NCBI RefSeq assembly: GCF_947568905.1
Contig: NC_079173.1
Coordinates: 18,414,001-18,478,000 of the forward strand
DNA length: 64,000 bases
From: Ostrea edulis
Taxonomy: Eukaryota
Direction: 5' to 3'
A program made the translations under genes and the position numbers. A model generated the notes under the pieces. The model made no database searches. It was not told the DNA's origin and worked only from the letters and a program-made list of their open reading frames with translations. Below are positions 22,224 through 63,146 of the stretch, one piece after another. Position 1 is the first letter of the stretch. Every line of letters begins with the position of its first letter.

Positions 22224-22402
22224 ATGCGGCTGGTGGTTCGGGTGTCTGTTGTGCTCTCTGTGCTTTACAGCCAGGGGACGAACGCCTGTCCTGACGAGTG
22301 TTACTGTGAACAGTCATCTTACTGTAATGGGACTTCTGTACATTGTGGTTCTAGAGGACTGAGCGGAGTACCAACTAACATCCCCACGGACACTTGTTAT
22401 AT
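22224..22402 (+). CDS. Exon 1 of a secreted/cell-surface LRR protein: signal peptide + LRRNT
   Basis: MRLVVRVSVVLSVLYSQGTNA|CPDECYCEQSSYCNGTSVHCGSRGLSGVPTNIPTDTCY: hydrophobic leader, CPxxCxC...VxCxxxxLxxVPxxIP LRRNT motif, ends AT|GTAAGT (phase-2 donor at 22403). Confidence 0.92.
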
Positions 22403-23402
22403 GTAAGTTATTCGAAGCATCTTAGAAAGTATAACACATGTTAACAAGGTTAAATAGTTGTTATAGAGCTATATTAATTGTGTTATTGCATTATGGGAAC
22501 ATTTTTTTTCGTAAATGAAATCCCGCAATTAACAAATACATGTGATATAAAAACATCAGCGTTATAAGACACGTATTTTTAATTCTAACAAATGATATAA
22601 ATAGTCAGTGTTTGAAGACACGCCTTTAAAAAAAAGAATGCATTGGGATCTATACACTGCGTTCAATGAATTCTATCAGCGTACTGAGGTTGTCGTTAAA
22701 CGTCATTTCTAGGTTCATTTAAGAAATAAGGATAGCACATTCCGGTGTGAAGCATCACACTTAGGGGCCCGTGTTTGGCCAACTCTCTATTCTGGATTTA
22801 TGAGATTAATCACTGTTCGTTATCTCCACCTTTCACAGTTCATACCTAAATTGTTTTCTAAAATGAAATTTCTTTTTTATATTTACGTTTTCCTCTCACC
22901 TCTGTCCGACTTCTTATACACAGTATATATATCAAATATATATACGTTCATACTTGCTTTACTAAGAATTAAATTGCGTTTGTGAATATTTGTTTATCAT
23001 TACATTTTGTAAATATACCAAAGGCAAAAACATCGGAAAGGTAATGATGCCAAAGTGATAAGTATTAGTTGGAATGTAGATTCGTTGTAATGCTACACAT
23101 GCTCATCAATTATGCAGTACTTATGCAGTACTTTTCGGGTTGCGAAATCTAAAACTCAGATAAGATACAGTACGAATCTATATCGATGGCCTCAAAAACG
23201 CAGACGCTTCTCCATAAATGTCAAAATACGGACACTTCCATATTGTTTAAAAACGAGTGAACATAATGAGGATGGTGAACTTGTTTTGCATTGTCAAATC
23301 TGTAGTTTGATTCTGCTTGTATTGTGCAAGGTGGATGACCTGTATAATTTAATAAATGATATAATTTATATGTATAAATTAATAATTAATGTATAATTTA
23401 TA

Positions 23403-23670
23403 AAAACACGGAACACTAGACATACCAAAGGAAGGATCAGGTGCTTAGGAAGAATTAACAACCCGCGTTAACTGACCACAACCGCCATGAGACCTATGTC
23501 TTCATCAGGTAAACGGAGTTAACTATAGTCAAAATCAGAATGTAAAGAGCGGTATATATTGCTATGAAATACGTTAGACAGCATTCGATAAAGTAGTAGT
23601 TCGTATTTGCAAATTTACCATTATGACAATCATAAAATTCGCAAAATGTTGACTTTAAAGAAGACTATAT
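23403..23670 (-). mobile_element. PLE 3' fragment
   Basis: GACATACCAAAGGAAGGATCAGGTGCTTAGG...TCAGGTAAACGGAGTT...GCAAAATGTTGACTTTAAA. Confidence 0.65.
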
Positions 23671-24272
23671 TGAGAATCGATAAATGAAATGTCGTCGACA
23701 TATATAAACGACGAAATAATGGTCACATCAGGATGTTTTTCCATTGCCACAGAAGATGAAATTAAAACCAATATACTAGTTGATGGATTTCAGTTTTACA
23801 CATTATGATAATATCTTATTAGTGTAGCCTGACATGGGGTAATGGTAATGTGCAATGGTTATGTAAGGACGGCCAATTTCACTGTAATGGGGTGTAATGG
23901 GTTTTGTTACATTGCAAGAAATGTTAATCTAATATATTAGTTGTAGAAAATATATTGTTTTGCTCATTCCAGTATACCCATCACATTTACATTACGTCAA
24001 ATATTTGATGATATGTTGGAGGTTTAGATCAATTCATTATATTAGTGATTGATTTTTAGATTTTTAGACTTTATGAACAAAACGCTTAACTTCATGGCTA
24101 TTGTCTTTAATAGTTAAAAGCATTTATTGAACCACATTTTAGTTCTAATACCTATGGTAAACCAACACAAAATATTTATTGAATGTTTATCTAGGGTTAT
24201 TTGTAAGGTTTCAAAGTAGACTGTTGTGAACTGTTTTCAGAAATTCTATCTATATTCTTCTTTCTATCTGAG

Positions 24273-25032
24273 TGAAAGGTGAAGATAATGAAGAGTATCA
24301 ATCTCATAACTCCTGTAAGCAATATAAAATAAAGAGTTGGGCAAACACAGACCCATGGATATACTTGTTAGAGCCAATGAACACATACTTTCAACAAAAA
24401 TGGAAAAGGGAAACATTCTTATTAAGTGATCATTCATCTAAAATAATCTCTGATTCCACGCACAAGTACTCTGAAGTTGAAATAAAAAATATGCTACAGT
24501 TTCTCTTTGACAATATCTTCGTGGTCTTCGGTGAGGAAGTTTTCCAATAGTCTGGTGGAATTCCCATTGGTTTGAATCGTGATCCTTTGTTAGCTAATGT
24601 GTTTCTATATTCATATACAACATAATTTATTCTGCGTATATTCAGTTGTTAAATCGAGACAAGCTACTAACAAACAAGTTGATGGTACAATGATTTCAAC
24701 ATTCTCGATTGAAGATAACATTTTGCAAATGTTGTGGTCATTATAGCGATCTAGTTCGTTAATACAACCTATCATTGGGTCAAATGCTTTCTGACGTGTT
24801 TTATACCGATTGTTAGACCGTTCTTGGTACACTGATTTTGACTACGGATAACTCCATTTACCTGGTCAGAATATAGGGCTCACGGCATGTGTGACCGGTT
24901 GACAGGGGATGTTTACTCCTCCTAGGCACCTGATTCTACCCCTGGTGTGTCCAGGGGTCCGTGTTTGCCAAACTATCTATTTTGTATTGCTTATAGGAGT
25001 TGATATTGATCACTGTTCGTTATAGTCGCCTG
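24273..25032 (+). mobile_element. 5'-truncated PLE (RT relic) carrying an inverted copy of its own 3' end at its 5' side
   Basis: 24273-24355 is the reverse complement of ~24955-25030; internal KYSEVEIKNMLQFLFDNIFVVFGEEVFQ*SGGIPIG is the RT motif region. Confidence 0.8.
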
Positions 25033-25119
25033 TTTTAGCCAGTTAATGTTACCAACTATAGTACTAGTGATAGAAAAGAAAGCTGACCACATCAGCACTG
25101 CTATATTTTAAAGCTGGAT

Positions 25120-26610
25120 AAATTTTCCTTTTCCAATTGTTGAAAGTTCAAATTTTAGGAGAATTGTTGGAAAATTGGACCGACCCCTGATATCAGATGC
25201 CCAGTCTTAAATGTCTTTCAAAGAAATCATTCGTGAGAAATATATGGAGGTAAAAGGGAATCTTAAAATTCCACTTTCTCAAACCAAAAGCATATACTTA
25301 ACTATGGATTTGCCGTCATATAGACATATAGAAGCTTTCATAGGAATTACTTGCTATTTCATTATATATTGGACAATTTATTCTGTAACATTATGCTGCA
25401 AACTGTTTAAAGAGAAACATTCTGCAGAAAAGACCCGCGGAGATTAGAAACAAACACTTGCAGTTTGATATTGGAAACAAAATGTGCACCATAGTTACTG
25501 AAAATCACTCAAATATGGTTAACATATATAAGATTTTCTGGCCTGGTTTTCATTTTGACAATGAAGATGAGTCTGAAGATAATGATAATGCATGGGGCAA
25601 CAATAAGGGGATGCCTCCTCCTCCTAGGCACCTGATCCCATCTCTGGTGCTTGTCTAACTATCTATTTTGTATTGTTTATATGATATTGATCATTGGTCG
25701 TTATTTTCACCTTTAATGGATGACACAGAAAATGAGGACAAGGAAGATAATATTGAACACTTGCCAAAACATTCTAAATGCGCACTTCCTGTAGGGGGTT
25801 CTTAAGAATGGTTTGAAGAATTGTTCTTTTTATTTAAACAATATAATTGCCAAAGCATCTCAAATTGTTAACTTTGTCAGGAGATCAATTCATGCATCAG
25901 AGTATTTATAATATGAATGAAGATAACAGGGCTCAAATGCAATCAAGTGGGACTCTCAGCTGAAAATGATCAGATCCGTCTTGAAGAGAAACTCAACAAT
26001 ATAAATAGTTCCTTGCATCAAATGAGCGTAATATATTTAAGGACTTAATTAACATCCATCCTCGACCCATTTGAATACGAAACACTTCTGATACAAGGAA
26101 ATGAAAGTGTTAGTCTTACTATTCCGTTCATTCTTGAACTTAAACACCAAGTCCATGCAAATATTTTATCTTTAGTGTACAATAACAAAATGATGAGCGC
26201 ATCGAAATAATCTTTGTCATTGCTACTTTCTGTGTTTGAATATCGGTATTTCATTTTAGTTGCAGTATTAAATCCAAAATTCTAGATAAGGCGGTGTTAG
26301 CCTCAGTAAATCAATAGCTAGTAAAAACGAAACATTGAAATATGCAGTTCTATCTCAGGAAAATTATAATAACGAAGAAGCCGATGAAGAACAATTACTT
26401 CCGCCAAAGAGAGTTTAGAAATATTTCTTCAGATTTATGTCTCAGTCAACTATTGAGATAATTCGAGATAAGTCTGGAGTGTCAGGAATTGATAGATATC
26501 TGTCTGAGCCATGTATTGATATGCATGATAGTGTTGTAAAATTCTGGAAAGACAATAATTGTAGATATCTAATACAACATTGAGATACCTAGCTATTCCT
26601 GCCACTTGCG
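25120..26610 (+). pseudogene. Decayed hAT (ZBED-like) transposase
   Basis: Fragments across frames: SIYLTMDL...FIGITCYF...LCCKLFKEKHSAE; FDIGNKMCTIVTENHSNM; KASQIVNFVRRSIHASEYL; LVAVLNPKF; IDRYLSEP...FWKDN...YLAIPATC (dimerisation domain). Stops, frameshifts and a PLE insert at ~25610-25715. Confidence 0.85.
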
Positions 26611-27152
26611 TTCAGTATTGAATGAAAGATATACAGAACAAGTCAATGTTTTCTGAAATATTGATGACAAAATGCAATAAATAACTTAGATACATTTCTG
26701 AAATTCATTGATATGCTGTGTTTATACTACTGTATCTTTTAATTCATAAATCCAGTGTAAATAAATATTTTTCAACCATTTGTTTAGTATCAGTATGATA
26801 TGTAATGTGTAATGCAATGTACTTTCAATTACATTTCAAAAGTATATCAGATCGCGCACTTTGTCGATAGTTGATTGTTGCACTTGAAATATCAATTAGA
26901 ATGATTATTTATGTGATAAAACGATATTGTGTAGATATATTTGTCTATTCTCATACTGATATTGTATATATTTTCCTAATGTATTTTGAATGCGGAAACC
27001 TCATAATAATACAAAACCAGATCATATGAATTTGCTCCAACAGATGTAATTAAAACCAAATGATGGTTTTCATTTTCATATATCATAATACATGTACAGC
27101 ATAATTGTAGCGTTGATCAATAAAGGTGAATCAATATATCTTTATCATTTAG

Positions 27153-27202
27153 AGAACTGAGCTACGATAGCGTAACAACGCTAAAGAATGGGGTGTATGA
27201 TG
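27153..27202 (+). pseudogene. Degenerate LRR cassette exon (5' two-thirds only)
   Basis: GCGTTGATCAAT...ATCATTTAG|A GAA CTG AGC TAC GAT AGC GTA ACA ACG CTA AAG AAT GGG GTG TAT GAT = ELSYDSVTTLKNGVYD; LRR Asn replaced by Asp; no GT at +72. Confidence 0.7.
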
Positions 27203-27250
27203 TTTATTATCACACTACTACTATCTCAATTGACAGACCCTGAGGCGTAC

Positions 27251-29416
27251 TACTACACCAGTGAAAGGGTGAACGAACGTTGAACGGTTTTGTTTAGAAA
27301 AAAAAGTTAATGGGTTTAAACGGTGCGGTTTTCAGCGAGAACGGACGGTTTCTAACGGAAACGGAACGCTTTGGGATTGGGAATGAACGGTTCTCATCGG
27401 GGATGGAACGCTTTGTTCAAATATAGGAGCAAGCGTTTTGGCCTCGATTTCAAATTATACATTTTGGACACTTTTGGTACTCTTTATTCATACATAGGTA
27501 TTGTAGGGAACAATATATTACTTGCCACACTGAAAGTTTAATATTTTTATTGAAATCATGAACACTGAAGGGAAGGGAATTGAAGTTAATTAATATTACA
27601 AGTATACGTGCCTTAAATTTCACATTGGGCTATTTATATTTATGTAATGTAATCAATAGACAACAACTTCAAACTTTCACCAACAAAAAATACAAATCGA
27701 ATTGCGTCAATTCAGGCTTTGTTCGCTGTCCCTATCATAATATTGTCACCCTTTACTGATGAAATGTTATATTTTTTCGATTATTTGAAACACAGAAAGG
27801 TATTTACACAGGTGATTTTAAAGAGGAATTTAGTTTGTACATGATTGCATTGCATGCATTTTTGTAACCTTTAATCAATGCTCATATACTATACAAATGT
27901 ACATTACAGTTAATATAACGTGCCAACCCATTTGAAATTTTCATCATATCCACATTCAGAATAAATGTATCCAAAACGAGATGGATATATGTGCATCAAA
28001 GGGAAAGATAACAAACAATGATCAACCTCATAACTCTTAGAAACAATACAAAAAGATAAATGGGGAAATACGGACCTCTGGACAACCAGAGGTGGGATCA
28101 GGTACCTAGGAGGAGTAAGCATCCCCAGTGGACCGGTCACACCCGCCTTGAGTCCTTGATAAGGTAAAAGGAGTTATTCGTAGGCAAAATCAGAAAACCA
28201 AGAACAGTCAAAAAAACGGTATGAAACACACTAAACACCATTTGATTCAATGCTAGGTTGAATTTGCAAACTAGATCGTTATAACGACCATATAATTTGC
28301 AAAATGCTGACTTTAAACGAGACTGTTGAAACCTCTATACCATCAAGTTGTCTCAATTTAAAAATTTACCATAAGGAGAACAAGTATTGCGTATCGAATT
28401 TAATGATAATTGATAATAAAGGATTCTAATTTCAAAACCAGTGTAATTAATTATCTTCAATAGAAATAATTCATTTTGCGTTTAAGTCAGATTGGGGAAT
28501 ACCCCCATTGTTTCAGTATCACGGTGACTTTTGAAGTTGTTTGATGGTATCTGTAAATGTACGAATTCCATACACCTACATTAAAAGGCTTTGACGAAAC
28601 CTGCCAAATCTAAAGAGGGATATCAAGAAAGCCAATTTCATCTGAAACGGGGACCTATAGTATGTACACTGTGACCACTCACCCATAGACTGGTACACGT
28701 GTACCGTTACATTAGCAACTCTTAGTGTCTCGATCACCTTATAACTTCTTTTGAAGACGACACCACACCAGTTGAATTCATTTTATTTTCCCAACATTTT
28801 CACTATTTTGAAATATGTCAAACTCCCATTAGTCAAAGAGTTATGTGCACTTACAACAGCTCTTATAATTTGATATTTTGTTTGTTTAGAAATCCCCTAT
28901 TGACAACATTGATGATAATGATAATAGCAATGATGATAAAAGAATCACCACTGCACGAAACTTTTCTTTTAATCAACAGTAGCATTGCTGCTATTTAATT
29001 ATTGGTTTCAAAATGATAAGCCCAGTGCACAAATTTTCTTATTCAGTATGTTGGTGTTCGTTCAGAATCTTAATGGAAGTAAATTTGCCGTTTATCCCAA
29101 ATTAAAATATATCCTTTCATGTCGTGATGAGCTGGTGATTTGTCTGTAAACTCTTACGGATTTGAACTGTAGAATTATCCACCTTTGTATAACTTTAAAA
29201 TATGTTCAATCAGAAGCTGTAGTCTACTATCTGGACCAAGCGCCATATTGACCTACAATATGAAACTGACGCACAGTTCCGAATGGCTATTCGGCAACGA
29301 AAACTATGAGGGAACGAATGCTTTGGTCTGGAAACGGAACGTTTTGGGTCCGAAATGGAACGTTAAACGGTTTAAACGGAAGGGTTTAATATGGGAACGG
29401 TTCAAATGGTGCAGTA
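27251..29416. mobile_element. Putative non-autonomous DNA transposon with AACGG-rich subterminal regions
   Basis: TACTACACCA ... TGGTGCAGTA (9/10 inverted match); (G)AACGG clusters at 27270-27415 and 29300-29400; PLE insert at ~27996-28400. Superfamily not assignable. Confidence 0.45.
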
Positions 29417-31209: not shown

Positions 31210-31690
31210 GTTTTGATGCTTACAGAAAATAACACTTAAGTTTATGTAAATGCGTTCGTCCGAGATCTGTTGATGAACCTCCTTTAAGAAATTATCTTTG
31301 TCAATGACAACATTAGTAGAACTTTTGTCTGCCTTTTTAATGGCAATATTATCCCGGTTTGTTAATGGTTGCAATGCCGACCTTTCTTCTTTGTTTAGAT
31401 TGTCTCGGGTTAAATCTGGCTTTGAAAGGATTTTGTCTATTTCTTTATCCACTACATCAATAAGACTCCAAAAACACAACATTTGCCTAGAGGTGGTTCC
31501 CAAGTGTTTCTGGGTCTGTGGAGAGGTTGCTACATTAAATTGTCAGCTGCATCTTGGGGTTGGGGGAGGCTCTGTTATATTAGAAGTCCTTGCGGGAGAA
31601 ATGTTCCTTAAGCTACAGTCGGCCGGAGACTGTTCTAGTATCCTCTATCATTTGTTGATCAATGAATTCACATAACATGTCCATTCATAA
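31210..31690 (-). mobile_element. PLE RT N-terminal relic of a second (Neptune/Penelope-like) family
   Basis: DKEIDKILSKPDLTRDNLNKEERSALQPLTNRDNIAIKKADKSSTNVVIDKDNFLKEVHQQISDERIY matches the NL.xEE.xAL..L....I.IK.ADK motif; upstream RL*LKEHF. Confidence 0.75.
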
Positions 31691-32215: not shown

Positions 32216-32246
<31 letters not shown>

Positions 32247-38986: not shown

Positions 38987-39058
38987 AAACCTGTGGTACA
39001 ATAAGATAACAACGTTGCAGAATGGAATCTTTGATGAGTTGACAAATCTACATACACT
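38987..39058 (+). CDS. LRR exon A (72 nt, phase 2-2)
   Basis: TTTCTGATTCAG|A AAC CTG TGG TAC AAT AAG ATA ACA ACG TTG CAG AAT GGA ATC TTT GAT GAG TTG ACA AAT CTA CAT ACA CT|GTAAAT = NLWYNKITTLQNGIFDELTNLHTL; in frame with exon 1. Confidence 0.88.
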
Positions 39059-45303: not shown

Positions 45304-48300
45304 ATACAGACAACAATCATAGTATTTTTCTCGAAGTTCTCATGGAAATTCGAAGTATAACAATTTCACACTCTTCTTTTAAGAAAAAAGAAAGAGACAG
45401 GCTTGAAAAAAAATTACTGGAAGAGATTGAAATCATAGAGTCGGACTATAACATTAATTTTAAACTTTTAGAGGAAAAAAAGGTTGAACTTGAAATTGTA
45501 AGGAAGGAAAAATTATAAGGTCACATCATTAGATCGCGGGCTAAATGGGTAGAAGAAGGGGAAAAACCTAGTAAATATTTCTGTTCTTTAGAATCCCGTA
45601 ATTTTTTAAACAAAACTATCAAAAAAGTAGAAACACATAAAGATCAGGTCATATATGACCAAGCGGATAGTCTTCATCATGTCAAAGATTTTTATGAAAC
45701 TCTTTACACATGTAAAGATTCAGATCTCTTAGATATAAATTTGGAAGATATCATAAATGTCTCGGACACCCCTAGGTTAGACAAGACAGCTTCAAACTCT
45801 TTGGATGACAAGATATCTGAAAGTGAAATATATACAGTTCTTAAAAATATGAAAAATAATAAATCACCAGGAAGTGATGGCTCCACCGTAGAATTTTTTA
45901 AATTGTTTTGGAAGGACCTCAAAAACCACATTGTATCAGCTGTTAATCATATTTTTGAGAAAAAGGAAATCCCTTTATCACAAAGACTGGGGATTATTAC
46001 ATGTTTGCCAAAAGATGACAAAGCCAGACAATTTCTGAAAAACTGACGTTCAATTACTCTTCCAAATGTGCTTTATAAACTTATATCGGGGTGTCTCAGT
46101 TATAGAATAAAATCTACCTTAGATTATTTGATATCGGAAACTCAGTCTGGGTTTATAAAAGGCAGGTACATAGGAGAAAACAGTAGGTATGTGTATGATC
46201 TCATGTCTTTCACTGAATCCAGCAACACACCAGGTTTACTTGTACTGATAGATTTTGAATTTTATATATAAGGTTTTAAGTTATTTTGGTTTTGGGGATT
46301 GCATAATTACTTGGATAAAAACCTTAAATACAAATATTAAAACATCTGTATTACAAAGTGGTTTCCAATCAGAGCAATTTGATATATAGAGAGGCTGTAG
46401 ACAAGGCGACCTTATTCCTCCTTATTTATTTATTCTTTGTGCAGAAATTTTAGCTATTCTTGTGAAACAGAATACAGATATCAAAGGTATAATAGTGAAT
46501 GGTAACGAACACAAAATTTCCCAATATGCTGACGACACAACTTTGGCTCTTGATGGTTCACCAAAATCTCTTTTTGCTGCACTTGACACTATAGATTACT
46601 AATCAAGTTTCTCTGGATTAAAAATAAACAGCTCAAAAACAAAAATTGTTTGGATAGGCTCTGAAAAATTCTCTAGTCAAGTATATCACCACACAAGATG
46701 GAAACTAGAGTGGGGATGCACTACTTTCAACTTACTAGGAATAGAATTTTCTGTGGATATGAAAAAAAAATAGTCGATTTAAATTATAATATTCAGATAC
46801 CAAAAATTAAAGCGTTGATACGCCAGTGGAATAGAAGAATACTCACCCCCATTGGTCGAGTCACAGTCACCAAATCACTGATTTTACCTAAGCTAAACCA
46901 TCTGTTTATTACACTACCAAATCCTGATAAAGATATCTTGTCTTTTCTGAATAACTGTTTTTTTTTTAAATTATATGGAATTCAAAGATTGACAAGGTCA
47001 AGAGACAAATTGTCACCTAAGATTACTTAAAAGGTTGCGTGAAAATGGTTGAGGTGAACAATTTTATAATGTCTTTAAAATGTTTTTGGATTAAAACATT
47101 AACAAACAGTCACAAACCATGGGTGGATATTCTTTGGCAGTACATGGCAGTGAGGTGGTAAAAAATGTGATATATTTTGGAGATGAATATATTTATACTA
47201 TTATAAACCATAGCAATGATTTTTGGCGTGATGTTTTTCAATCATGGTTAGCAATGATTCGAGAAATGGATGAAAAGTATTTCATGCAAAAACTCAGTTC
47301 TATTCCAGTATGGCATAACACAAATATGTGTGTTGGTAATAAAGACATTTATGTTAAAACATGGTATCAACATGGTGTGAAAATAATTGGAGACTTTTTA
47401 GATAAATATGGAATTCTTTTATTACTACAAGATTTTTCACAAAAATTTAGACTAGCAAATGTATGTACAATGCAATACAACAGTATTACCAGTACTATAT
47501 CTAAGTTTTTAAAGACTTTGTCTGTAAAGAGATCAGATGTTAAAGAAAATTGTATACCATTTATTCCTTTTTACTTTGAATTTATACTGTTGAATGATAA
47601 ATGTTCCAGAGTGTTATATGATATGATAAGTAGTAATGATCTCATACCCAAATCAATTCAAAAATGGAACACTGAATTATCTGTCCACTTGATTGGCACG
47701 CTGTTTTTGGCTATATTTAGATCTAAAACTTTCGGTTGAGTATCACTTAAGAGACATTATTTGTCGAAATGCGCATCTGGTGCGTCAAAATTGGTACCGT
47801 ACAAGTTTTACATTTAGAAGGCAATGTTTCTGTCAAAGAGCTGTTTAAAGTTTGTTTTAAAACAAGTACTGATACCCAAGTTCAGTGGTTGCAGTACCGA
47901 ATTCTTTACCAGCTTCTTCCTACGAAATATTACCCCAAGAAAATCAGTATAATTTCAAATGACTGTTGTTCGTTTTGTAAAGAAAATGTAGAAACAATGC
48001 AACATATCTTTATGTCTTGTTCTTATACTTTAGCACTGTGGAATAATCTTTCCATGCATATTTTCAGAAAAAAAACATAAAAAAGAATTGGTTTTAATGT
48101 TAGTAATGTTATTTTGGGTGAAACACCTCTCAGTTTGTGTAATAAAGTTGTTAATTTCATAATTATGTATACCAAACAATATGTTTTCAATTGTTCAAAA
48201 CAAAACAAAATTCCTCATATCACTGGGCTGATATATTATCTTTCTTTCAAATACAAAGTTGAAAATTTTGTAGCAATTAAATCATGTGAAGTTTTGAAAT

Positions 48301-49057: not shown

Positions 49058-49227
49058 AAATGGAAAATATAATTTTTAGAATATAGACAAGCCATTCATG
49101 ATAGATTTAAACTACTTGTTTACTGCAAATAGCATGCATTTGCGTATTGAATCATTTTAGAAAATTATATATTTCATCCTTTGAGCGTTGATCAATTAAG
49201 ATTAATCAGGAAATATTTTTCATTCAG

Positions 49228-49299
49228 AAACTTGGGTAACAATGACATAACAACGTTACCAAATGGAATCTTTGATGCATTGACGAAGCTACAGAAACT
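49228..49299 (+). CDS. LRR exon B (72 nt, phase 2-2)
   Basis: TTTTCATTCAG|A AAC TTG GGT AAC AAT GAC ATA ACA ACG TTA CCA AAT GGA ATC TTT GAT GCA TTG ACG AAG CTA CAG AAA CT|GTAAGT = NLGNNDITTLPNGIFDALTKLQKL. Confidence 0.92.
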
Positions 49300-49344
49300 G
49301 TAAGTATATATGTATACATAACAATTATTTGTATGCAGAGGAAT

Positions 49345-49990
49345 TGAAGAAAATAGACAATGTTGAACAGTGTTGAATCTTATATCTGCATGTATTATAA
49401 GCAATGTAAAATTAAGAATTGGAGAAACATGGACCCCTGGGTAAACCAGACATGGGAACAGGTGTTTAAGAAGGGTAAGCATTCCCTATTGACCGACTAA
49501 GTATCCCCTGTCGACCGGTCACATCCACCATGAGCCCTATAATCGGAGTGATCCGTAGTCAACGTTAATGTGTAAAGAATGGCCTAACAATTAGTATGGA
49601 ACATATTAGACATAATTTGACTCAACGACAGGTTGTACTGGTAAGTTAGATCGTTGTAACGAGCATATATTTTGCGAAATGTTGACTTTAATCGAGACTG
49701 TTGAGACTCCTGCAATATAAACTTTTTTTTGAGGATTTTGCCTCGATTAAAAAAAAATATCATAAGCATAGCAATTCAGGCACATACATACCTAATAAAA
49801 GTGATAATTGAATACTGCTAAATAGATATAAATCAAGGTTAACGATGGAGAAGCTGAAGTCATCGTGTTTTTCATCAGGTTGAGTGCCTAGTTTCCTTTT
49901 AAAATGTATGTTCAATAACATTTCTAAGTACGATACAGAAATAGAAGGCTATATGGTTTCTTTTATTTCGACTTCACAATATATCGAAAT
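49345..49990 (-). mobile_element. PLE 3'/RT C-terminal relic
   Basis: ORF 49584..49769(-): LQESQQSRLKSTFRKIYARYNDLTYQYNLSLSQIMSNMFHTNC. Confidence 0.75.
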
Positions 49991-52245: not shown

Positions 52246-52277
<32 letters not shown>

Positions 52278-52285
52278 AGTGTAGT
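50669..52285 (+). mobile_element. Helentron-like non-autonomous element (HINE), nested in another HINE
   Basis: 5' AAGGTCTTCC with hairpin GTCTTCCGTTTCCAAATGAAGAC, (ATT)n tract, internal ~440-bp CCGGAAGT-bearing repeats, 3' subTIR GGAAGACCT (52246-54) and hairpin CTCGTTGCTCGCAACGAG (52256-73). Confidence 0.75.
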
Positions 52286-53070: not shown

Positions 53071-53521
53071 TCTTTGTTATTTTGAGGCGGTGCTCAATTG
53101 CAATCCAAATAGATCATAAGCAAAAATTGCGCTAATGAAATGAATCAACTGAGAGACACAGGTACGGTAAATAGGTGATAATTAAATATCGCTACATAGA
53201 TATAGGAACTGATGATAGAGAACGTGAAAATATCCCATTTGCCATAAAGGATATCAGTTCAATTACCATCAACGTCTCCGTTCTGTAAAGAAGAAATATC
53301 TAAATATAGAATAACATCTCTGTGGTGTTTTATTTTGGAATTCACTGGGTTATTTTCTATTCAATATATGTATGAAAATTATATTTGTTAGAAAATAAAT
53401 AAATGGTGGCCGATGGACCTAATTCCCATGTTTAAAGCCATACTTATGCGCTCGTGTATTAAATCAGTTTACAGAATAATATATTTCATCATTGTAGTGT
53501 TGATCAATGAAACTTAATTAG

Positions 53522-53576
53522 TACATAAAACGTTAAAGAATGGAATCATCGGTACACTGACGAAACTATGGATATT
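53522..53576 (+). pseudogene. Degenerate LRR cassette exon (acceptor and 5' part deleted)
   Basis: GTGTTGATCAATGAAACTTAATTAG-TACATAAA ACG TTA AAG AAT GGA ATC ATC GGT ACA CTG ACG AAA CTA TGG ATA TT|GTAAGG = TLKNGIIGTLTKLWIL; only 55 nt from the nearest AG, so not frame-preserving. Confidence 0.75.
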
Positions 53577-54035
53577 GTAAGGATATCTATATAGATACCG
53601 ATTATTTGTATGACAATTAAATATTGTCGATGAGAGTAATTGTACGAAAAGTGTTAATTTGAAATTGGTCTTGATTTGTGTTACTTTACCCAATGAAAGG
53701 TGAAAACAAAGAACAGTGATATATCTTATAATGAATGATGCAAAATTATTTCAGTTGCTCATACAAATTCAATTGTCCGAAGAAATTATTCTATCTGATC
53801 TCTCATAAAATTGATCACTGTCCGTTATCCTCGCCCTTCAATGTTTCAGATGTTATTTTGAGGCAGTGCAAATTTACAATCCAAATTGATCAGAAGAAAA
53901 AACAAATGCACTAGTAAAATGAATCAGTTGGAATACATCGGTACGATAACTACGTGATGATGGAATATCGCTACATAGATATTTGAACTAATGATGGATA
54001 ACCTGGAATTATCCCATTTGCCATAAAATGTAAGT

Positions 54036-54790
54036 AAGGTGAAGATAACGAACAGTGATCAATTTCATAACTCCTATAAGCAATACAAAATAGATAGTTG
54101 GGCAAACACGGACTCCTGGACACACCGGAGGTGAGATCAGGTGCCTAGGAGGAGTACGCATCCACTGTTGACCGGTCACACCCGCCGTGAGCCCTATATC
54201 CTGATCAGGTAAACGGAGTTATCCGCAGTCAAAATCAGTGTGCCAAGAACGGCTTAACAATCAGTATGAAACACGTCAGACAGCATTTGACCCAATGCCA
54301 GGTTGTACTGACGAACTAGATCGTTATAACGACCATAGAATTTGCAAAATGCTGACTTCAATCGAGACTGTTGAAATCCCTGTACCATCAACTTGCTTGT
54401 CAGTAGCTTAACTCGATTTAAAAACTGACTATACGCAGAACAAGCTATTGCATATCGAATCAGTTGAGATATATAAACACCATATGCAGGTGATAATGGA
54501 ATATTGCTACATAAATATGGGAAGATGACGATGGAGAAGCAGAAATCATCCCGTTTGTCATACAGTTGAGTTGTCAGTTTCCCGTTAATGTTTACTTTCA
54601 ATAAAATATCTAAGTATGAAACAGAAGTGGACGACTCTGTGGTGTCCTTTATTTCCAGCTTACAGGGAGATATCAAATCGACATATGAATGAAAGCTATC
54701 ATTGCTAATAAACAAAACGTCATCGATATATCTAAAAGTCGAATTGAAGGTCACAGCGAGAGATTTTTTCTTCTCAAATAAAAGTTTTTG
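54036..54790 (-). mobile_element. Well-preserved PLE RT 3' half (open frame through YIDD to the stop)
   Basis: IQKLLFEKKKSLAVTFNSTFRYIDDVL...SYLDILLKVNINGKLTTQLYDKRDDF...QLIRYAIACS...YNDLVRQYNLALGQMLSDVFHTDC* within ORF 54254..54955. Confidence 0.9.
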
Positions 54791-55071
54791 AATTAATTGA
54801 ATAAATATAAGTTCATTTACCATTAACTTCTCCATTCTGTAAATAAAAAGATCTAAATATAAAACAACATCTCTGTGTTCTTTTATTTTGGAGTTGACCT
54901 GGTTATTTCTATTGAATATATGTATAGAAATTATATTTGTTAGAAAATACATCAACCTTGGTTGATGGATCTAATTCCCATATTTAAATTCATACTTATG
55001 CGCTCGTGCATTAAATCAGTGTACCGAATAATATATTTCATCATTATAGTGTTGATCAATTAAGCTTAATA

Positions 55072-57269: not shown

Positions 57270-58578
57270 CTGTTCAATATCTGTCGTCTGTCCGTCTGTC
57301 TGTAATTTTTTTTATATTTTCGATTTCTGCTCCAGAACCCTGTAATCAATTTCAACCAAACACGGCCAAAAGCATCCTTGGGTAAAGGGATTTCAGGTTT
57401 GTGCAAATGAAGGGTCATGTCCCTTTGAAAGGGGAAATAATTACAATTAATGGGGTCATTTAAAAATCTTCTCCTCAAGAACCACTGGGCCAGAAAAACT
57501 GAAATTTACGAATTCACGTGAAAATTTCCTGATATAGTGCAGATTTAAGTCTGTTAAAATCATGCCCCGGCGGTTGGATCGGACCACAATAAGGGATCAA
57601 AATTTTACATAGAAATATATAGAAAAAAATCTTTCATAATCCTCTTCTCAAGAACCACTGAGACAGAAAAGATGACATTTACGTGAAAGCATCCTAAGAT
57701 AGTGCAGATTCAAGTCCGTTAAAATCATGGCCCCGGGAGTTGGATGAGTTCACAATAGGGATCAAAGTTTTACATACAAATATGTAGCAAAAATCTTTAA
57801 AAATCTTCTCAAGAACCACTGAGCTAGACAAATTGATATTTACGTGAACGCCTCCTGAAATAATGCAGATTCAAATTTGTTAAAAGTATGCTCCCTGGGT
57901 TGGATGGGGCCACAATGGGCGATCAAAGTTTTACATACACTGTACAAATATATAGGGAAAATCTTTTAAAATATTCTTCTCAAGGAACCACTGACCCAGA
58001 ACAGCTGATATTTACATGAGAGTTTCCTAACACAGTGCAGATTCAAATTTGTAAAAATAATGGCCCTGGAGCGAGGACAGGGCCACAAGGGGGGATCAAA
58101 CTTTTACATAGAAATATATAGGGAAAATTGTTTGAAATCTTCTAAAAAACTACTGGGCCAAAAAATGGAAATTGACATAAAAGCTTTCTGAAATAGTGCA
58201 TATTGGAGTTTGTTAAAACAATGGCCCTCGAGGATAGGATGGACCACATTAGGAAATCAACGTTTTGCATAGGGGAAATCTTTAAAAATCTTCTTTAAAA
58301 ACTACTGGTCCAGTAAAGTTGAAATTTACGAGAAACCTTCCTGACATAGTGCAGATTTAATGTTATCAAAATCATGGCCCCCGGGTGTAAGATGAGGCGA
58401 CAATAGGAGGATCAAACTTTTACATACAAATATATGGGGATAATCATTTAAAAAATCTGAAAAATCACTGGCCTAGAACAGTTTACATTCACATGAAAGC
58501 TTCCTGACAGTCCAGATTCAATAAAAATTGGCCCGCAGGAGTAGTTTGGGGCCATAATAGGGATCAAACTTTTACATG

Positions 58579-58580
<2 letters not shown>
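57270..58580 (+). repeat. Cg170/HindIII-type ~165-bp satellite array (~7 monomers) in a HINE-like element
   Basis: GTCTGTCCGTCTG leader, then repeating AAGAACCACTG...AAAATCATGGCCCC...GGGATCAAAGTTTTACAT at ~57480, 57650, 57810, 57985, 58150, 58300, 58465. Confidence 0.85.

Positions 58581-58582
<2 letters not shown>

Positions 58583-58636
<54 letters not shown>
58583..58636. repeat. (TA)n microsatellite
   Basis: Direct reading. Confidence 0.95.
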
Positions 58637-58641
<5 letters not shown>

Positions 58642-58821
58642 TTCGTCATCCTTGATTACTGCTATATTTTACATCACATAATTTCATTGTTTAGATTGAA
58701 ATTGGTCACTGTTTGTTTCTTCACTTTTTCACACTCTAATCGTTATATCTAGCATAATGAAAGAATAGTGAATGAACCTCCATCATAAAAGAGCTGATAT
58801 ATCGAAAATTGCATATTAATG

Positions 58822-59420
58822 AAAGGTGAATATAACGAAAAGTGACCAATCTTACAACTCATACACACAATACAAAATAGAGAGTTGGGCAAACACAGAC
58901 CCCTGGATATACCGGATGTGGGACTTGGAGCCTTGAATTAGTAAGCATCCCCTATTGACCGGTCACCTCCGCCGTGAGCCCTATATCTTGATCAGGTAAA
59001 CGATGTTATCCGTAGTCAACATCAGTGTACCAAGAACGGCCTAACAATCAATATGAAACATGTCAGACATCATTTGACACAACTGTAGGTTGTATTTGCA
59101 AACTAGATCGTTATAACGACGATAGAAGTTGACTTTAAACGAGGCATTGTCAGTAGCCTGATTCAATTCAAAAACTAACCATACACAGTATAAGCTCTTG
59201 TGTATTGAATCAGTCGAGATATAAAATGACCATACGCAGGTTTTAATGAAATATTGTTACATCAATATGGGTTGACGATGGAGAAGTTGAAATAATCCCG
59301 TTTGTCGTAAAATCGAGCTGTTGGTTTGCCGTTAATATCCACTTTTAATAAAATATCTAAGTATGGCGCAGGAGCGGACGACTCTGTGGTGTCTTTATTT
59401 CGAGTTCACTCGGATATATC
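58822..59420 (-). mobile_element. PLE 3'/RT C-terminal relic
   Basis: TGAAAGGTGAATATAACG terminus through ACTCTGTGGTGTCTTTATTTCGAGTTCACT (reverse of ELEIKDTTES). Confidence 0.8.
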
Positions 59421-61157
59421 GCTTTTTCTTTTGGTTATCTTAAAAATCATTGCAAACTTTCAAATAGGTTCTATTACAAACGTTAATCTAATCAGAAATT
59501 GATATTAAAAAAAAACTTATTCTAAAGACTCCTCAAATGCGGATGTCATACTAAAGTCACTGAAAAACATAAGGAAAGTAGATTACAAGAAACGCAGCGT
59601 AGTTTACCAGATTATCATTTAGCAATTAAATACTAAAACTAATGAATATTTAGATGAGTAATTGAAGATAAATTCTCTTATTGTCTTTAAAACACCTTTA
59701 CTACCTCTAATGATGTCATTTATTACCTGAATTCCTTATCCAACAACATGACAACATTTCAAGCAATACAGAGTACGTTATAACCATCAAACATCAGACC
59801 CTTTTACTCTGTTACTTTAAACGCACACTTTGTCGTTGCTTTTCCTTTTTAAAATTTATTTCCAATTCTGTCATGATTAATGGGTTCAGAGACTTCGTTA
59901 TTTGCTTTAATTTGTGAAACTCGTAGCTCATCAGGATTACTTGACAATTTAAACAAGGTTCGCGCTCCTGGTAATGTTTCTGTCTTCCGTGCAAAAAAGT
60001 AATGAAAACTTCATCGTCGTTTTCGTCAACTTTAAGAAACAAATCTATGATTATCGTAGCAAGTAGAAACGTACTGACCCACATTAACTCCATGGACGGT
60101 CTTCAGTCATTAAAAACATGGCTATGCTCTTCATGTGCAGTTTTTCTATTCCGATGTCACAATGTATTTGCATTGCTCCTATCACTGGGGCAAATAGTTC
60201 CGCTAATCCATCTCAATTACTAGTAGTTGCACAATCTTCAGCATTTACAAACACATAATTAAAACGTGTGTGATATCGATAATTCAACGCATGTTGGACG
60301 GTTATCGCCCCCTGTTGTATAATGAGAAGAACTCTTCTATAAAACTCGGTTTACATTGGCAACGGTCGTCGTGTGATTATTTAGTATGTTGTTTTCTGTA
60401 CGATTTAGGGCATCTCAAGAAGTTATTGCATATTGTTTATATTTCAGTGCTATTTTTACACGATTTATTGTAAAGAGGTTCGGGGAAATTTGTATGATGG
60501 TCGTATGAAAATTGTTAGATTATCGAATACTTTTATAATAGCCCATGTGCGATCTCCCAAAGTCGTTCGAGAGCTCTGAAAAGTCCTTTGAATGCCCCAC
60601 GACACTACACTATTTGTAAAATTAATTGTTTGCACAACAAACTTAAATTACAGTACGTTTAATGTCCGATTAGCAACGTTCGTTCGTGCAATGAGTGTGT
60701 GGAAGTCGTACAATACAATATACAACATGTACACGGGGTGCGCGATTCTCTGGTGCAATCCCAGTTACTGTGTCATTGCAAGGAAGCAGCATAGCAAGGT
60801 AGATATGATATCCACACAAATTAAAACTAAAAATTAGCAGTATCTATTTAAGAAATGAACATCACTTTTTAGCTGTACATAAAATGTAATACATGTATAT
60901 TATGTATACGCACAGAGTGGCGTTACATTACACGTAAATACACACACAACATTAGCTTATTTCCAGATAATATCCTGGATATACCTTCTGTTAAGAATAT
61001 ACATTTATACTTTTGTCAATTGGAAAGGCTCTGTATACCTTTTACTCCACAATCACATAGAAGTTTTACATTGCATTGTTATGCATTTACACATGTGGGA
61101 CAAAGTTTACTTGATGACTACAATGCCGCACCATACAGTGAACACTTGATTCAATTA

Positions 61158-62069
61158 CCGTATATCAGGGTTTTTCCTCGTGTATCTATTTTCCGCTTTG
61201 TTCGCGACGATTTCTGAATCGCGGAGAATAAATCCTAGTAAATTTGAGTCAAAGTTTTGTTTTTGTAGTAGAGTTATATAGCATAAGGTAATAGTGCGGT
61301 GAAAGTTCTGTGTTCAGTTCCCCCTATATCTGATAATCGCCAAGTAACAGGTGTGTACGCTTCGGTGTTTATATTCAAAATATGACAATCTATTGAAATG
61401 GGCCACGTTCTTTGCTTCAATCAATATATAATTATACCTGAGCTACTCATACATGTAACAGTGCATGGTTTATCGTTTCAAACTGAAAATAATTATCGAT
61501 ATATATTTTGTATGAGTATTATTATAGTTAACGAACAATAATTTATGTTACTATACCGGCAAATTGTGCATATTTACAATACATTTGAGTGTAAACGAAA
61601 GTGTACAATTCTTTTTGAAAACTGGTTCGCAGCACAGGAGGGTGATCCCCGGAGCGCGTCTTTAAAAATTGACGAGGTGTGGTTCGATTTATTTCTCACC
61701 TGGATCAAGCCACTTGGAGCAAAATGGCTGACAAAGTTCTATGATTACGTGCAAACAAAACTCGAAATGGTCCGAGATGGATTCAGAGAAATAGGAATAT
61801 CATCCATATTCAGATTTGATTATAATTGCGACAGTAACTACGAAATCTTGTAAATCGTTTCATTGACTGAATTTTACATAAACAATTACGAGTTATAGGT
61901 AAAAATGCTGGCTTCTCCCCTCAACTCCTTTATAAGTTTAAATAATCGTGAATTATTTTTTCGCTATAACTTTGAAATAATGAATATTTCATTCGCGTAG
62001 ATTTGATATACTGTTTTAGGTTCTGAACTCGCGGGAAAAATATGACGCGGAAAAAAACCTGATATACAG
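61158..62069 (+). mobile_element. Internally deleted pogo-like Tc1/mariner element with TA target-site duplication
   Basis: TA(61156-57)-CCGTATATCAGGGTTTTT ... AAAAAAACCTGATATACAG-TA(62070-71); internal DLFLTWIKPLGAKWLTKFYDY...VRDGFREIGI resembles a pogo/DDE_1 C-terminus; empty site with a single TA at 44619-20 in the paralogous unit. Confidence 0.85.
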
Positions 62070-63074
62070 TAGTGTCATTTTGATACTAATGAAAATCACA
62101 TGTATGAAATTAAGTTAACACAAAGGAACTCCGTAACTAGATGTTTTATGACTTTTAAAATAACAAAACAATATACAAATGGCTGAGTAGTAAATAAAAC
62201 ACCTTGCCTCAGAGAAGCTGGATTATATGCAGCTTTACATATATGTCATGTATAGAAATGGGGAAAGTTTGCTGAATAATATAAACTGTTATACAGAGAA
62301 GTATAAAAGCGTCCTTTCTGCTAGACTGCCGTGTCCAAATTGAATTCAGCACCGACTGGCGGTTTAAAGTCCAGTGAAGTGAGGTTCCAATTAGGGCACA
62401 ATAAAAAAGGCTCCAAACAGAATTTGAGGTGTGTTATATACACAGAATAAGAGAATAGTATTTACATTACATACAAAATGAGAATATGGGGAATTTAACT
62501 TAACATTCATTTTTCAATATCGGTTCAGATTTTAAAGTAAATTGCATATAAGTATGTTTCCACCTGTTCATTTATACAAACTATAAGTTGGGAATTTCTT
62601 TTGAGTCAATGAGAAATTAAAAAGCTAAATCAATAATACACAGATGCGCTTGTCTATCGAATCATTTGGGTGACGCAGATATCATACACATGTGATAGTG
62701 AACTATTTTTACATACATATAGGAAGTTGATGGTGACGGACCTTATTTTTTTTCTTAGCTGCCATAAAACTTATGTGTTCGTTTACCATTAACGTCCCAA
62801 ATCAATAAGAATGAAATTCAAATATAAAACACAGATAGAGAATTCTGTGATGTTTTTATTTCGAGTTGACTGGATAATTTCTGATCAACACGTTTAAAAC
62901 AAAATATAATTATTAGATAATTGACTAACCGTTTGTGATGGATTGAAATTACTTGTTTAAAACCAAATTTAGTGCAAAATATGCTGTCGCAGATTGGATC
63001 AGTCTAGAAAATGATTTATTTCTTCATTTGAGCGTTGATCGATTAAGGTTAATCAGGAAATATTTTTGATTCAG

Positions 63075-63146
63075 ATCCTTGTGGGGAAATAAAATAGCAA
63101 CGTTACCAAATGGAATTTTTAATGCATTGACGAAGCTAGAGACACT
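63075..63146 (+). CDS. LRR exon C (72 nt, phase 2-2)
   Basis: TTTTTGATTCAG|A TCC TTG TGG GGA AAT AAA ATA GCA ACG TTA CCA AAT GGA ATT TTT AAT GCA TTG ACG AAG CTA GAG ACA CT|GTAAGT = SLWGNKIATLPNGIFNALTKLETL. Confidence 0.92.

What the first reader, a model, noticed from the sequence alone, without database searches (positions are those of the whole stretch)
22224..63146. Hidden VLR-like LRR receptor gene built from an array of single-repeat 72-nt cassette exons, intact and decayed
Seen: a signal peptide + LRRNT exon ending in phase 2, then three intact 72-nt phase 2-2 exons 10-17 kb apart. They splice to ...TDTCYI-NLWYNKITTLQNGIFDELTNLHTL-NLGNNDITTLPNGIFDALTKLQKL-SLWGNKIATLPNGIFNALTKLETL. Two decayed cassettes (27153, 53522) and an exon-less cassette (~55070) lie among them. 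None of the LRR exons appears in the ORF track except as antisense shadows. Established: the 24-aa LxLxxNxIxxLPxGxFDxLTxLxxL module with an ACP..C.C LRRNT is the type used by agnathan variable lymphocyte receptors and related LRR proteins; 72-nt phase-2 exons are also normal in Slit/LGR-type genes. Inference: a recognition receptor whose LRR number and content turn over by cassette birth and death, a candidate diversifying immune or recognition locus in a bivalve. Orthology to VLR is not claimed.
Basis: partly seen in the sequence, partly recalled or inferred. Interest (0 to 1): 0.88.

Follow-up and report, generated by a model that had tools for sequence, protein, structure and literature searches.

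The report
Oyster one-repeat-per-exon LRR receptor gene
The window holds the first four exons of an ordinary spliced oyster gene for a small secreted or membrane leucine-rich-repeat protein; each 24-residue repeat is its own 72-base exon, and the binding-face codons have changed faster than the neighbouring introns.

Summary
There is a signal-peptide plus LRRNT exon (22224-22402, phase 2) and three 72-nt phase 2-2 LRR exons (38987, 49228, 63075) with AG/GT sites. Three decayed cassettes lie at about 27.1, 53.5 and 55.05 kb.

It is not a VLR-type system. It is the 5' part of a member of an oyster-expanded gene family that RefSeq already models in Ostrea edulis as 'slit homolog 2/3-like', 'LRRC15-like' and 'vasorin-like'. 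Family products run signal peptide, LRRNT, n x 24-aa LRR, LRRCT, Thr-rich stalk, then a short tail or a transmembrane segment. In three mapped paralogues every LRR is one exon (19 of 72 nt, one of 75) and the exons are joined by normal splicing.

The window has no LRRCT exon, so the gene runs off the 3' end.

Cassette death here is old: two pseudo-exons carry the same lesions as their counterparts in a paralogous gene.

Concave-face codons vary more than the flanking introns, and framework codons vary less. This holds in the window and is much stronger in one paralogue. RefSeq isoforms of three paralogous genes differ by exactly one 24-aa repeat.

An immune role is untested. This is a new member of a known kind, of moderate interest. 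Other readers of this scan noted similar loci elsewhere in this genome.

The parts
21884..22223 (+). Promoter-proximal / 5' region shared with the paralogous gene in L001
   Evidence: Window 21884-22582 aligns to L001 9664-10354 (77%). The 340 nt upstream of the ATG are 80% identical. No promoter test was done.
22224..22402 (+). Exon 1: start codon, signal peptide, LRRNT cysteine cap, first residues of LRR1. Ends in phase 2.
   Evidence: Pfam LRRNT E 5.5e-4. 83% identity to O. edulis XP_056008138 residues 1-58, E 3.7e-24.
27066..27250 (+). Pseudo-exon: acceptor kept, insertion in mid-exon, donor lost
   Evidence: nhmmer E 7.6e-13 and alignment A1. It carries the same insertion as L001:16014-16141.
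38987..39058 (+). LRR exon 2, 72 nt, phase 2-2
   Evidence: AG/GT sites and reading frame. Positional counterpart of the L001 exon at 18213; the surrounding 550 nt are 84% identical.
45741..48080 (+). Decayed non-LTR retrotransposon inside intron 2. It separates exon 3 from the upstream segment of its unit.
   Evidence: ORFs. zf-RVT E 6e-11.
49228..49299 (+). LRR exon 3, 72 nt, phase 2-2
   Evidence: Flanks are 85-89% identical to L001 cassettes and to exon 4.
49365..49969 (+). Old relic of an abundant ~700-bp interspersed repeat, part of the duplicated cassette unit
   Evidence: 68% identical to the reference copy at 54036-54750. The same relic follows exon 4.
53446..53612 (+). Pseudo-exon: ~35-nt deletion removing the acceptor and the 5' part of the exon
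   Evidence: nhmmer E 1.3e-18. Identical deletion in L001:51450-51623.
54985..55070 (+). Cassette remnant: upstream flank only
   Evidence: Window 54811-55071 aligns to L001 51261-51518 at 82%.
63075..63146 (+). LRR exon 4, 72 nt, phase 2-2; last coding piece seen before the window ends
   Evidence: Window 62710-63999 aligns to L001 36589-37924 at 80%.
63213..63877 (+). Repeat relic downstream of exon 4, part of the duplicated unit

Best explanation
The window carries the first four exons, spread over at least 41 kb, of a conventional protein-coding gene. The genome is probably Ostrea edulis or a close relative.

The gene belongs to a family expanded in oysters. Family products consist of a signal peptide, an LRRNT cap, a variable number of 24-residue LRRs, an LRRCT cap and a Thr/Ser-rich stalk. 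They end either in a short Cys-containing tail (secreted form) or in a transmembrane segment with a Tyr-rich cytoplasmic tail.

Each LRR is one symmetric 72-nt phase-2 exon, and the mRNA is made by ordinary splicing. The remaining LRR exons, the LRRCT exon and the stalk/tail exons should lie beyond base 64000.

Inferred history:
- Repeats were added by tandem duplication of ~1.5-kb units (exon plus flanks plus an old repeat relic).
- Some copies died by indels.
- The introns were later inflated by transposon insertions.

After duplication, codons for the exposed beta-strand (concave-face) positions x2, x3, x5, x7, x8 and x10 changed faster than the flanking introns, while framework codons changed more slowly. 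The protein is therefore most likely a ligand-recognition module under diversifying selection.

Because every LRR exon is symmetric, skipping one keeps the reading frame. Annotated isoforms of paralogues do this.

Status of each claim:
- Shown: exon anatomy, family membership, the shared exon plan, the ancient pseudo-exons, the substitution pattern.
- Inferred: expression of this copy, its 3' end, a recognition function.
- Speculative: an immune role.
For: Anatomy.

Homologues: exon 1 matches O. edulis proteins at E 3.7e-24 down to 1e-11. Names and species are (O. edulis, Saccostrea cucullata, S. echinata, Magallana gigas).

Exon plan: mapped in L001, L002 and L003. All 20 mapped LRRs are single exons (19 of 72 nt, one of 75) with AG/GTAAGT sites, followed by LRRCT, stalk and tail exons.

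Paralogy: the window is paralogous to L001, not identical, with collinear single-copy blocks at 77-84%.

Selection, as minimum changes per site:
- Window exons: x-codons 0.78, flanks 0.47, framework 0.22. Framework below flank, P=0.005.
- Window/L001 cluster: 1.06, 0.44, 0.31 (P=0.012).
- L002: 0.44, 0.05, 0.02 (P=2e-5).

Isoforms differing by exactly one 24-aa LRR: P0073/P0006, P0073/P0072, P0074/P0034 and P0082/P0028. Secreted versus transmembrane isoforms: P0005/P0029.

Fold: an AlphaFold model of paralogue P0002 has pLDDT above 90 in the solenoid. Its best matches are LRRTM2, Nogo receptor, VLRs and SALM3.
Against: - No transcript evidence exists for this copy.
- No product with this N-terminus was found among database proteins of 180-574 aa. 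The copy may be unannotated, only partly modelled, or not expressed.
- No LRRCT exon lies in the window. After 55 kb the order of homologous blocks differs from L001, so exon 4 could belong to a rearranged or separate unit.
- Exon 1 is no better conserved than its flanks against L001 (82% versus 80%).
- The selection tests use few sites. The pairs are not independent, and only ungapped flank columns were counted, which understates flank divergence.
- RefSeq isoforms are computer models. In genes with near-identical exons they could reflect read-mapping ambiguity.
Confidence: 0.75

Rival explanations
1. It is a dead or dying paralogue. A 5' gene fragment lost its LRRCT end through rearrangement, and its exons still look intact only because too little time has passed.
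For: No LRRCT exon is in the window. In L001 the LRRCT exon lies 1.2 kb after the pseudo-exon that corresponds to window 53.5 kb. In the window that position is followed by transposon sequence and then by blocks that come earlier in L001. No matching protein of 180-574 aa is in the database. Exon 1 is no more conserved than its flanks.
Against: All four exons are open and all six splice sites are canonical. Framework codons of the three LRR exons vary less than their flanks (0.22 versus 0.47 changes per site, P=0.005), which points to purifying selection over most of their history. The block order also fits a tandem duplication of an internal segment, with the 3' end lying further downstream.
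Confidence: 0.15
2. The locus is a splicing-based diversity generator. The symmetric LRR exons are included in varying combinations, so one gene yields many receptors with different repeat number and content, as in Dscam.
For: All LRR exons are 72 nt and phase 2-2, so any subset stays in frame. RefSeq isoforms of three paralogous genes in two species differ by exactly one LRR exon.
Against: Only single-exon skips are annotated, and none for this gene. There is no RNA pairing signal between intron 1 and the conserved sequence upstream of the cassettes: duplex energies equal those of shuffled controls. The conserved flanks are no better conserved than the more distal unit sequence, so they look like shared ancestry rather than regulatory elements. 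Exons 10-17 kb apart are unlike known mutually exclusive clusters.
Confidence: 0.15
3. It is a VLR-type system. The germline cassettes are templates copied into an incomplete gene by somatic gene conversion.
For: Only the protein module type and layout resemble VLRs. VLRs are among the best sequence and fold matches.
Against: Every intact cassette has an AG acceptor and a GT donor in the right phase. All cassettes are on the + strand, in exon order. Paralogous mRNA models join such cassettes by splicing. VLRs are not closer than LRRTM2, IGFALS, LRRC15 or Nogo receptor.
Confidence: 0.01

Closest known systems
Ostrea edulis RefSeq models XP_056008138 ('vasorin-like'), XP_056008141 ('slit homolog 3 protein-like'), XP_056007243 ('LRRC15-like'), and relatives in Saccostrea and Magallana
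   Same: The signal-peptide/LRRNT exon is 83%, 74% and 69% identical. The 24-aa LRR consensus is the same. The exon plan is the same: a phase-2 exon 1, then 72-nt LRR exons separated by long introns. Pseudo-exons are shared with the XP_056008141 gene.
   Different: This copy matches none of the retrieved proteins exactly. The best per-exon identities are 18-19 of 24 residues. Its 3' end is outside the window, and the order of its blocks differs from the XP_056008141 gene after 55 kb.
Agnathan variable lymphocyte receptors (VLRA/B/C)
   Same: The modules are alike: signal peptide, LRRNT, 24-aa LRRs with variable concave-face residues, LRRCT, Thr-rich stalk. Hagfish VLRA 2o6q aligns to the paralogue model at TM 0.86 by target and 36% identity.
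   Different: The cassettes here are spliced exons, not donor templates. There is no connecting peptide before the LRRCT. No somatic assembly is indicated. VLRs are not the single closest relatives.
Slit and LGR / glycoprotein-hormone-receptor genes (exon plan; from my own knowledge)
   Same: One LRR per ~72-nt symmetric exon after an LRRNT exon. Slit of the annelid Owenia and an LGR5-like protein appear among the distant hits to exon 1.
   Different: Family products are 235-436 aa with a single LRR domain. Pfam finds no EGF, LamG, CTCK or 7TM domain.
Nogo receptor, LRRTM2, LRRC15, GPIb-IX-V subunits (capped extracellular LRR ectodomains on a stalk)
   Same: They are the best fold and sequence matches. 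The LRRCT is of the same four-Cys type.
   Different: These vertebrate genes encode the LRR domain in one or a few exons (my knowledge). They are not known for exon-level turnover.
Amphioxus VLR-like protein Bf66946 (PMC4731796) and scallop LRR-only pattern-recognition proteins CfLRRop (reviewed in PMC5877582)
   Same: They are small invertebrate LRR proteins proposed or shown to bind microbes through the concave face.
   Different: No sequence comparison was made here. No binding or expression data exist for the oyster family.

Membership tests
Oyster SP-LRRNT-LRR(n)-LRRCT-stalk family (RefSeq 'slit homolog 2/3-like', 'LRRC15-like', 'vasorin-like') | Homologous signal-peptide/LRRNT first exon | tested here: met
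   E 3.7e-24, 83% identity to P0001; ten further family hits at E<=1e-10.
Oyster SP-LRRNT-LRR(n)-LRRCT-stalk family (RefSeq 'slit homolog 2/3-like', 'LRRC15-like', 'vasorin-like') | Each 24-aa LRR is one 72-nt phase-2 exon with AG/GTAAGT sites | tested here: met
   Window. Paralogues L001, L002, L003.
Oyster SP-LRRNT-LRR(n)-LRRCT-stalk family (RefSeq 'slit homolog 2/3-like', 'LRRC15-like', 'vasorin-like') | LRRCT exon followed by Thr/Ser-rich stalk and tail exons | not testable with these tools
   Absent from the window and expected beyond base 64000. The window cannot be extended.
Agnathan VLR | Incomplete germline gene whose flanking LRR cassettes lack splice sites and are copied in somatically | tested here: not met
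   The cassettes have in-phase AG/GT sites. All lie on the + strand in exon order. Paralogue mRNAs splice them.
Agnathan VLR | Module order LRRNT-LRR1-LRRV-LRRVe-connecting peptide-LRRCT-stalk | tested here: inconclusive
   Paralogues have LRRNT, 24-aa LRRs, LRRCT and a Thr-rich stalk. The last LRR runs straight into NPLxCxC with no connecting peptide.
Agnathan VLR | Dependence on AID/APOBEC-type cytidine deaminases and clonal expression | not testable with these tools
   This needs cell-level DNA and RNA data.
Slit | Four capped LRR domains plus EGF repeats, LamG and a C-terminal cystine knot | tested here: not met
   Pfam on six family proteins finds only LRR and LRRNT models; lengths are 283-436 aa.
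LGR / glycoprotein hormone receptors | LRR ectodomain joined to a seven-transmembrane domain | tested here: not met
   No 7TM family was found in the paralogues. One isoform has a single transmembrane segment (P0029).
Dscam-type mutually exclusive exon clusters | Docking and selector intronic RNA pairing | tested here: not met
   Duplex energies of the 90 nt upstream of each cassette against the first 600 nt of intron 1 equal those of shuffled controls. Only that part of the intron was tested.
Bivalve LRR-only pattern-recognition proteins | Binding of microbial ligands, induction in haemocytes | not testable with these tools
   Known for scallop CfLRRop (PMC5877582). No data exist for this family.

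The most novel reading that the evidence does not exclude
Oysters run a germline, exon-level route to LRR receptor diversity. Units of ~1.5 kb, each carrying one symmetric LRR exon, are duplicated or kept homogeneous, while selection drives apart only the handful of concave-face codons. In paralogue L002 the units are 98% identical over ~780 nt, yet 17-44% of x-codon bases differ. Exon skipping then varies repeat number. The result would be a family-wide repertoire of recognition surfaces that functionally parallels VLRs but is built by duplication and splicing.
Probability: 0.15. Interest if true: 0.75.

Novelty: new member of a known kind. Interest (0 to 1): 0.45.

Why it matters
Bivalves lack antibody-type immunity, yet they expand recognition gene families on a large scale. 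This family is compact and has one repeat per exon. Neutral flanks sit directly beside each exon, so selection on the binding face can be read off exon by exon.

If these proteins bind microbes or parasites such as Bonamia, the family could supply candidate markers for oyster disease resistance. It would also be a clean case of convergent use of the VLR/GPIb-type scaffold.

As it stands, the window shows one ordinary and rather old member of the family. The striking pattern lies in a paralogue on another chromosome.

Tried and rejected
- **Dscam-like docking/selector pairing** between intron 1 and the conserved sequence upstream of the cassettes: no signal above shuffled controls (the first attempt, timed out).
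- **Further LRR or LRRCT exons in the window**: none found by motif scan or by tblastn with 17 family proteins.
- **This copy's own product in the protein collection**: a search with the N-terminal region of P0002 returned only P0002 and P0004. Whole-protein searches were swamped by generic LRR words. Proteins under 180 aa were not covered.
- **DNA of the closest paralogue, P0001**: Look-ups of the shorter isoforms P0056 and P0006 found nothing, because only the longest product of a gene is on record.
No matching upstream copy in the same orientation was found, and none lies next to exon 2.
- **Pfam on nine other intron ORFs**: no hit at E<=0.01. Only one ORF, with zf-RVT, was placed.
- **Literature**: seven searches found no paper on this oyster family or on 72-nt LRR exons in Slit. 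The Slit/LGR exon statement therefore rests on my own knowledge.


Full report
**1. What is in the sequence**

The window is 64 kb, about 33% G+C, with one run of 151 N at 21109-21259.

On the + strand an ATG at 22224 opens a 179-nt exon that ends at 22402 before GTAAGT. It encodes a hydrophobic signal peptide and a cysteine cap of the pattern C-P-x2-C-x-C ... C ... C. After the cap come the residues VPTNIPTDTCY and two bases of the next codon. Pfam LRRNT matches residues 21-54 at E 5.5e-4, below the curated cut-off.

Three further exons lie at 38987-39058, 49228-49299 and 63075-63146. Each is exactly 72 nt. Each is preceded by a pyrimidine-rich stretch ending TTCAG and followed by GTAAAT or GTAAGT. 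The introns measure 16.6, 10.2 and 13.8 kb.

Motif scans in six frames, and tblastn with 17 family proteins, find no other LRR exon and no LRRCT exon anywhere in the window. A profile built from ten intact cassettes finds three decayed ones in the window, all on the + strand:
- 27066-27250 has an insertion and no donor.
- 53446-53612 has lost about 35 nt, including the acceptor.
- 54985-55070 keeps only the upstream flank.

**2. What family it belongs to**

A full HMMER scan of 1.84 billion representative proteins with exon 1 gave 28 hits, 11 of them at E<=1e-10. Of those 11, nine are RefSeq models from oysters: eight from Ostrea edulis and one from Saccostrea cucullata. The O. edulis models are named 'vasorin-like', 'slit homolog 2/3 protein-like' and 'LRRC15-like'; a further family member found later is named 'carboxypeptidase N subunit 2-like'. 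Weaker oyster hits come from S. cucullata, S. echinata and Magallana gigas. Beyond the oysters the hits are Slit, MXRA5 and LGR5-like proteins of other phyla.

Complete family members are 235-436 aa. They consist of a signal peptide, LRRNT, three to eight 24-aa LRRs, and an LRRCT of the pattern NPLxCxC...C...C. A Thr/Ser-rich stalk follows, and then either a short Cys-containing tail or, in one isoform (P0029), a transmembrane segment with a Tyr-rich cytoplasmic tail. One gene adds an Ig-like segment (P0030). Pfam sees only LRR and LRRNT models, with no EGF, LamG or 7TM domain.

The best hit, P0001, is 83% identical in exon 1. None of the retrieved proteins contains the window's exons exactly; the best match per exon is 18-19 of 24 residues.

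All close hits are from O. edulis. Interspersed repeats in the window are up to 94% identical to copies in an O. edulis locus. The window is therefore from O. edulis or a close relative, and this particular copy was not recovered as a protein of 180-574 aa.

**3. The exon plan is a family trait, and the exons are spliced**

I fetched three O. edulis loci and mapped their products onto them:
- P0002 on L001 (OX387713.1): seven LRR exons of 72 nt.
- P0073 on L002 (OX387712.1): five LRR exons of 72 nt.
- P0074 on L003 (OX387705.1): seven LRR exons of 72 nt and one of 75 nt.

In all three, exon 1 ends in phase 2. Every LRR is a separate exon with AG and GTAAGT sites, spaced 0.7 to 26 kb apart. One LRRCT exon follows, then one or two stalk and tail exons. 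The model for P0001 spans 289 kb for 156 aa.

The window shows the same plan up to its end. Its missing LRRCT and stalk exons are therefore expected downstream.

This settles the mechanism in favour of ordinary splicing. VLR donor cassettes, by contrast, lack splice sites and are copied in somatically.

**4. History of the cassettes**

Homology between cassettes extends beyond the exon. It covers about 90 nt upstream and 60 to 400 nt downstream, at 71-88% identity.

In L001 three cassettes sit only ~1.5 kb apart and share the whole unit. The unit includes an old relic of an abundant ~700-bp interspersed repeat, about 140 nt downstream of the exon. The same relic follows window exons 3 and 4.

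Most of the remaining intron sequence is transposon-derived. So the likely sequence of events is tandem duplication of small units, followed by inflation of the introns.

The window gene and the L001 gene are collinear from about 3.5 kb upstream of the ATG to just beyond the first LRR exon. Window exon 2 corresponds to the L001 exon at 18213.

The pseudo-exon at 27.1 kb carries the same insertion as the one at L001:16014. The pseudo-exon at 53.5 kb carries the same ~35-nt deletion as the one at L001:51450. Both deaths therefore predate the duplication that separated the two genes, which now differ by roughly 20% in non-coding sequence. Birth and death of cassettes is real in this family, but at this locus it is old rather than ongoing.

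After 55 kb the block order differs from L001. Window 59.4-60.8 kb matches L001 43.3-46.1 kb, and exon 4 follows it. The simplest reading is an internal segmental duplication, with the true 3' end further on. A truncating rearrangement is the alternative.

**5. Selection**

Before counting, I labelled the codons by LRR position. Positions x2, x3, x5, x7, x8 and x10 are the exposed beta-strand residues; the remaining 17 full codons are framework.

Between window exons 3 and 4, 11 of the 14 differences fall in the six x-codons. That is 61% of x-codon bases, against 6% of framework bases and 14% of flank bases.

Minimum changes per site:

| Set | x-codons | Flanks | Framework | Test |
|---|---|---|---|---|
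| Three window exons | 0.78 | 0.47 | 0.22 | framework below flank, P=0.005; x above flank, P=0.049 |
| Six related cassettes (window + L001) | 1.06 | 0.44 | 0.31 | x above flank, P=0.012 |
| L002, four exons with full flanks | 0.44 | 0.05 | 0.02 | x above flank, P=2e-5 |

The L002 paralogue is the extreme case. Among these four exons the flanks are 97.7-98.4% identical over ~780 nt. Framework codons differ at 0-1 of 51 bases, while x-codons differ at 3-7 of 18. Almost all variation sits in the first 13 nt of the exon.

Across 76 repeats of the family, entropy peaks at x5, x7, x8 and x3.

This pattern is what diversifying selection on the binding face, combined with purifying selection on the scaffold, would produce. 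It also argues that the window's exons have been functional.

Caveats:
- The number of sites is small.
- The pairs are related, not independent.
- Only ungapped flank columns were counted.
- Gene conversion that homogenises units while selection preserves x-codon differences would give the same picture. That would still be selection for diversity.

**6. Splice variation**

Because all LRR exons are symmetric, skipping one preserves the frame. RefSeq isoforms differ by exactly one 24-aa LRR in three genes:
- O. edulis P0073 versus P0006, and P0073 versus P0072 (a different exon, plus a 5-aa stalk difference).
- O. edulis P0074 versus P0034 (the first LRR exon).
- S. echinata P0082 versus P0028 (the last LRR).

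Other isoform pairs differ at the C-terminus, for example secreted P0005 against transmembrane P0029.

These are computed models, and no such evidence exists for the window's own gene. A test for Dscam-like intronic pairing was negative.

**7. Comparison with known systems**

By sequence, the closest solved structures to paralogue P0002 are an engineered LRRTM2, IGFALS, lamprey and hagfish VLRs, LRRC15, LRIG1 and LGR4. Its LRRCT matches LRRC15, Slit2, GPIb-beta and Toll caps.

An AlphaFold model of P0002 has mean pLDDT 80, above 90 across the solenoid and below 50 in the stalk and tail. It superposes best on LRRTM2, Nogo receptor, VLRs and SALM3.

The one-repeat-per-72-nt-exon plan is the one I know from Slit and LGR genes. 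I could not find a paper in the library to cite for that.

Among invertebrates, the nearest described analogues are the amphioxus VLR-like protein Bf66946, which binds Gram-positive bacteria through its concave face (PMC4731796). The scallop LRR-only pattern-recognition proteins are another (PMC5877582). No paper on this oyster family turned up.

**8. Verdict**

The finding is real and accurately described. Its headline overstates the case: this is a conventional, rather old member of an already machine-annotated oyster LRR family, not a hidden VLR-like system.

What is worth keeping is the family-level pattern of exon-by-exon duplication, hypervariable concave-face codons and in-frame exon skipping. 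That pattern is much sharper in paralogues than in this window.

Earlier notes of this scan describe similar loci elsewhere in this genome. They were used as leads only.

Noticed in passing
L002:28611-54078 (O. edulis OX387712.1, gene of P0073): Among the four LRR exons whose full flanks align, the flanks are 97.7-98.4% identical over ~780 nt. The exons differ almost only in their first 13 nt (codons x5, x7, x8): 3-7 of 18 x-codon bases against 0-1 of 51 framework bases.
   Followed up: partly
L002:20024-20095: A sixth cassette not used in the RefSeq model has GG in place of the AG acceptor and a diverged upstream flank (77%), although its reading frame is still open.
   Followed up: no
window 21109-21259 and flanks 18367-18990, 20679-21107: A 151-N run lies 1 kb upstream of exon 1. 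Two window segments, one ending at the N run and one about 2.1 kb further upstream, both match the same upstream region of the paralogue (L001 ~9000-9617, 81%). This points to a local duplication at the gap. The N run was left as it is.
   Followed up: no
window 54036-54955 and about 30 other places: An abundant ~700-bp interspersed repeat occurs in both orientations throughout the window. The copy at 54036 is 93-94% identical to copies in O. edulis L001. A minus-strand ORF (54254-54955) contains an RYIDD reverse-transcriptase-like motif but gave no Pfam hit. Earlier notes call it Penelope-like.
   Followed up: partly
window 45741-48080: A decayed non-LTR retrotransposon (zf-RVT, E 6e-11) sits in intron 2.
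   Followed up: partly
P0029 (O. edulis XP_056002185), C-terminal 60 residues: The membrane isoform of one family gene has a cytoplasmic tail with YDAI and YLEV motifs eight residues apart, an ITAM-like spacing, plus further Tyr motifs. Its sister isoform P0005 ends after the stalk and would be secreted.
   Followed up: no
P0001 gene model (O. edulis GCA_947568905.1, 48.99-Mb chromosome): The closest paralogue is modelled as a 156-aa product without LRRCT, spread over 289 kb. It is probably an incomplete or chimeric model that may run across other family copies.
   Followed up: no
window 49192-49482 (-) and 63024-63368 (-): Antisense ORFs of 96 and 114 aa lie over LRR exons 3 and 4 and are similar to each other. 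They are shadow frames of the duplicated unit, not genes.
   Followed up: no
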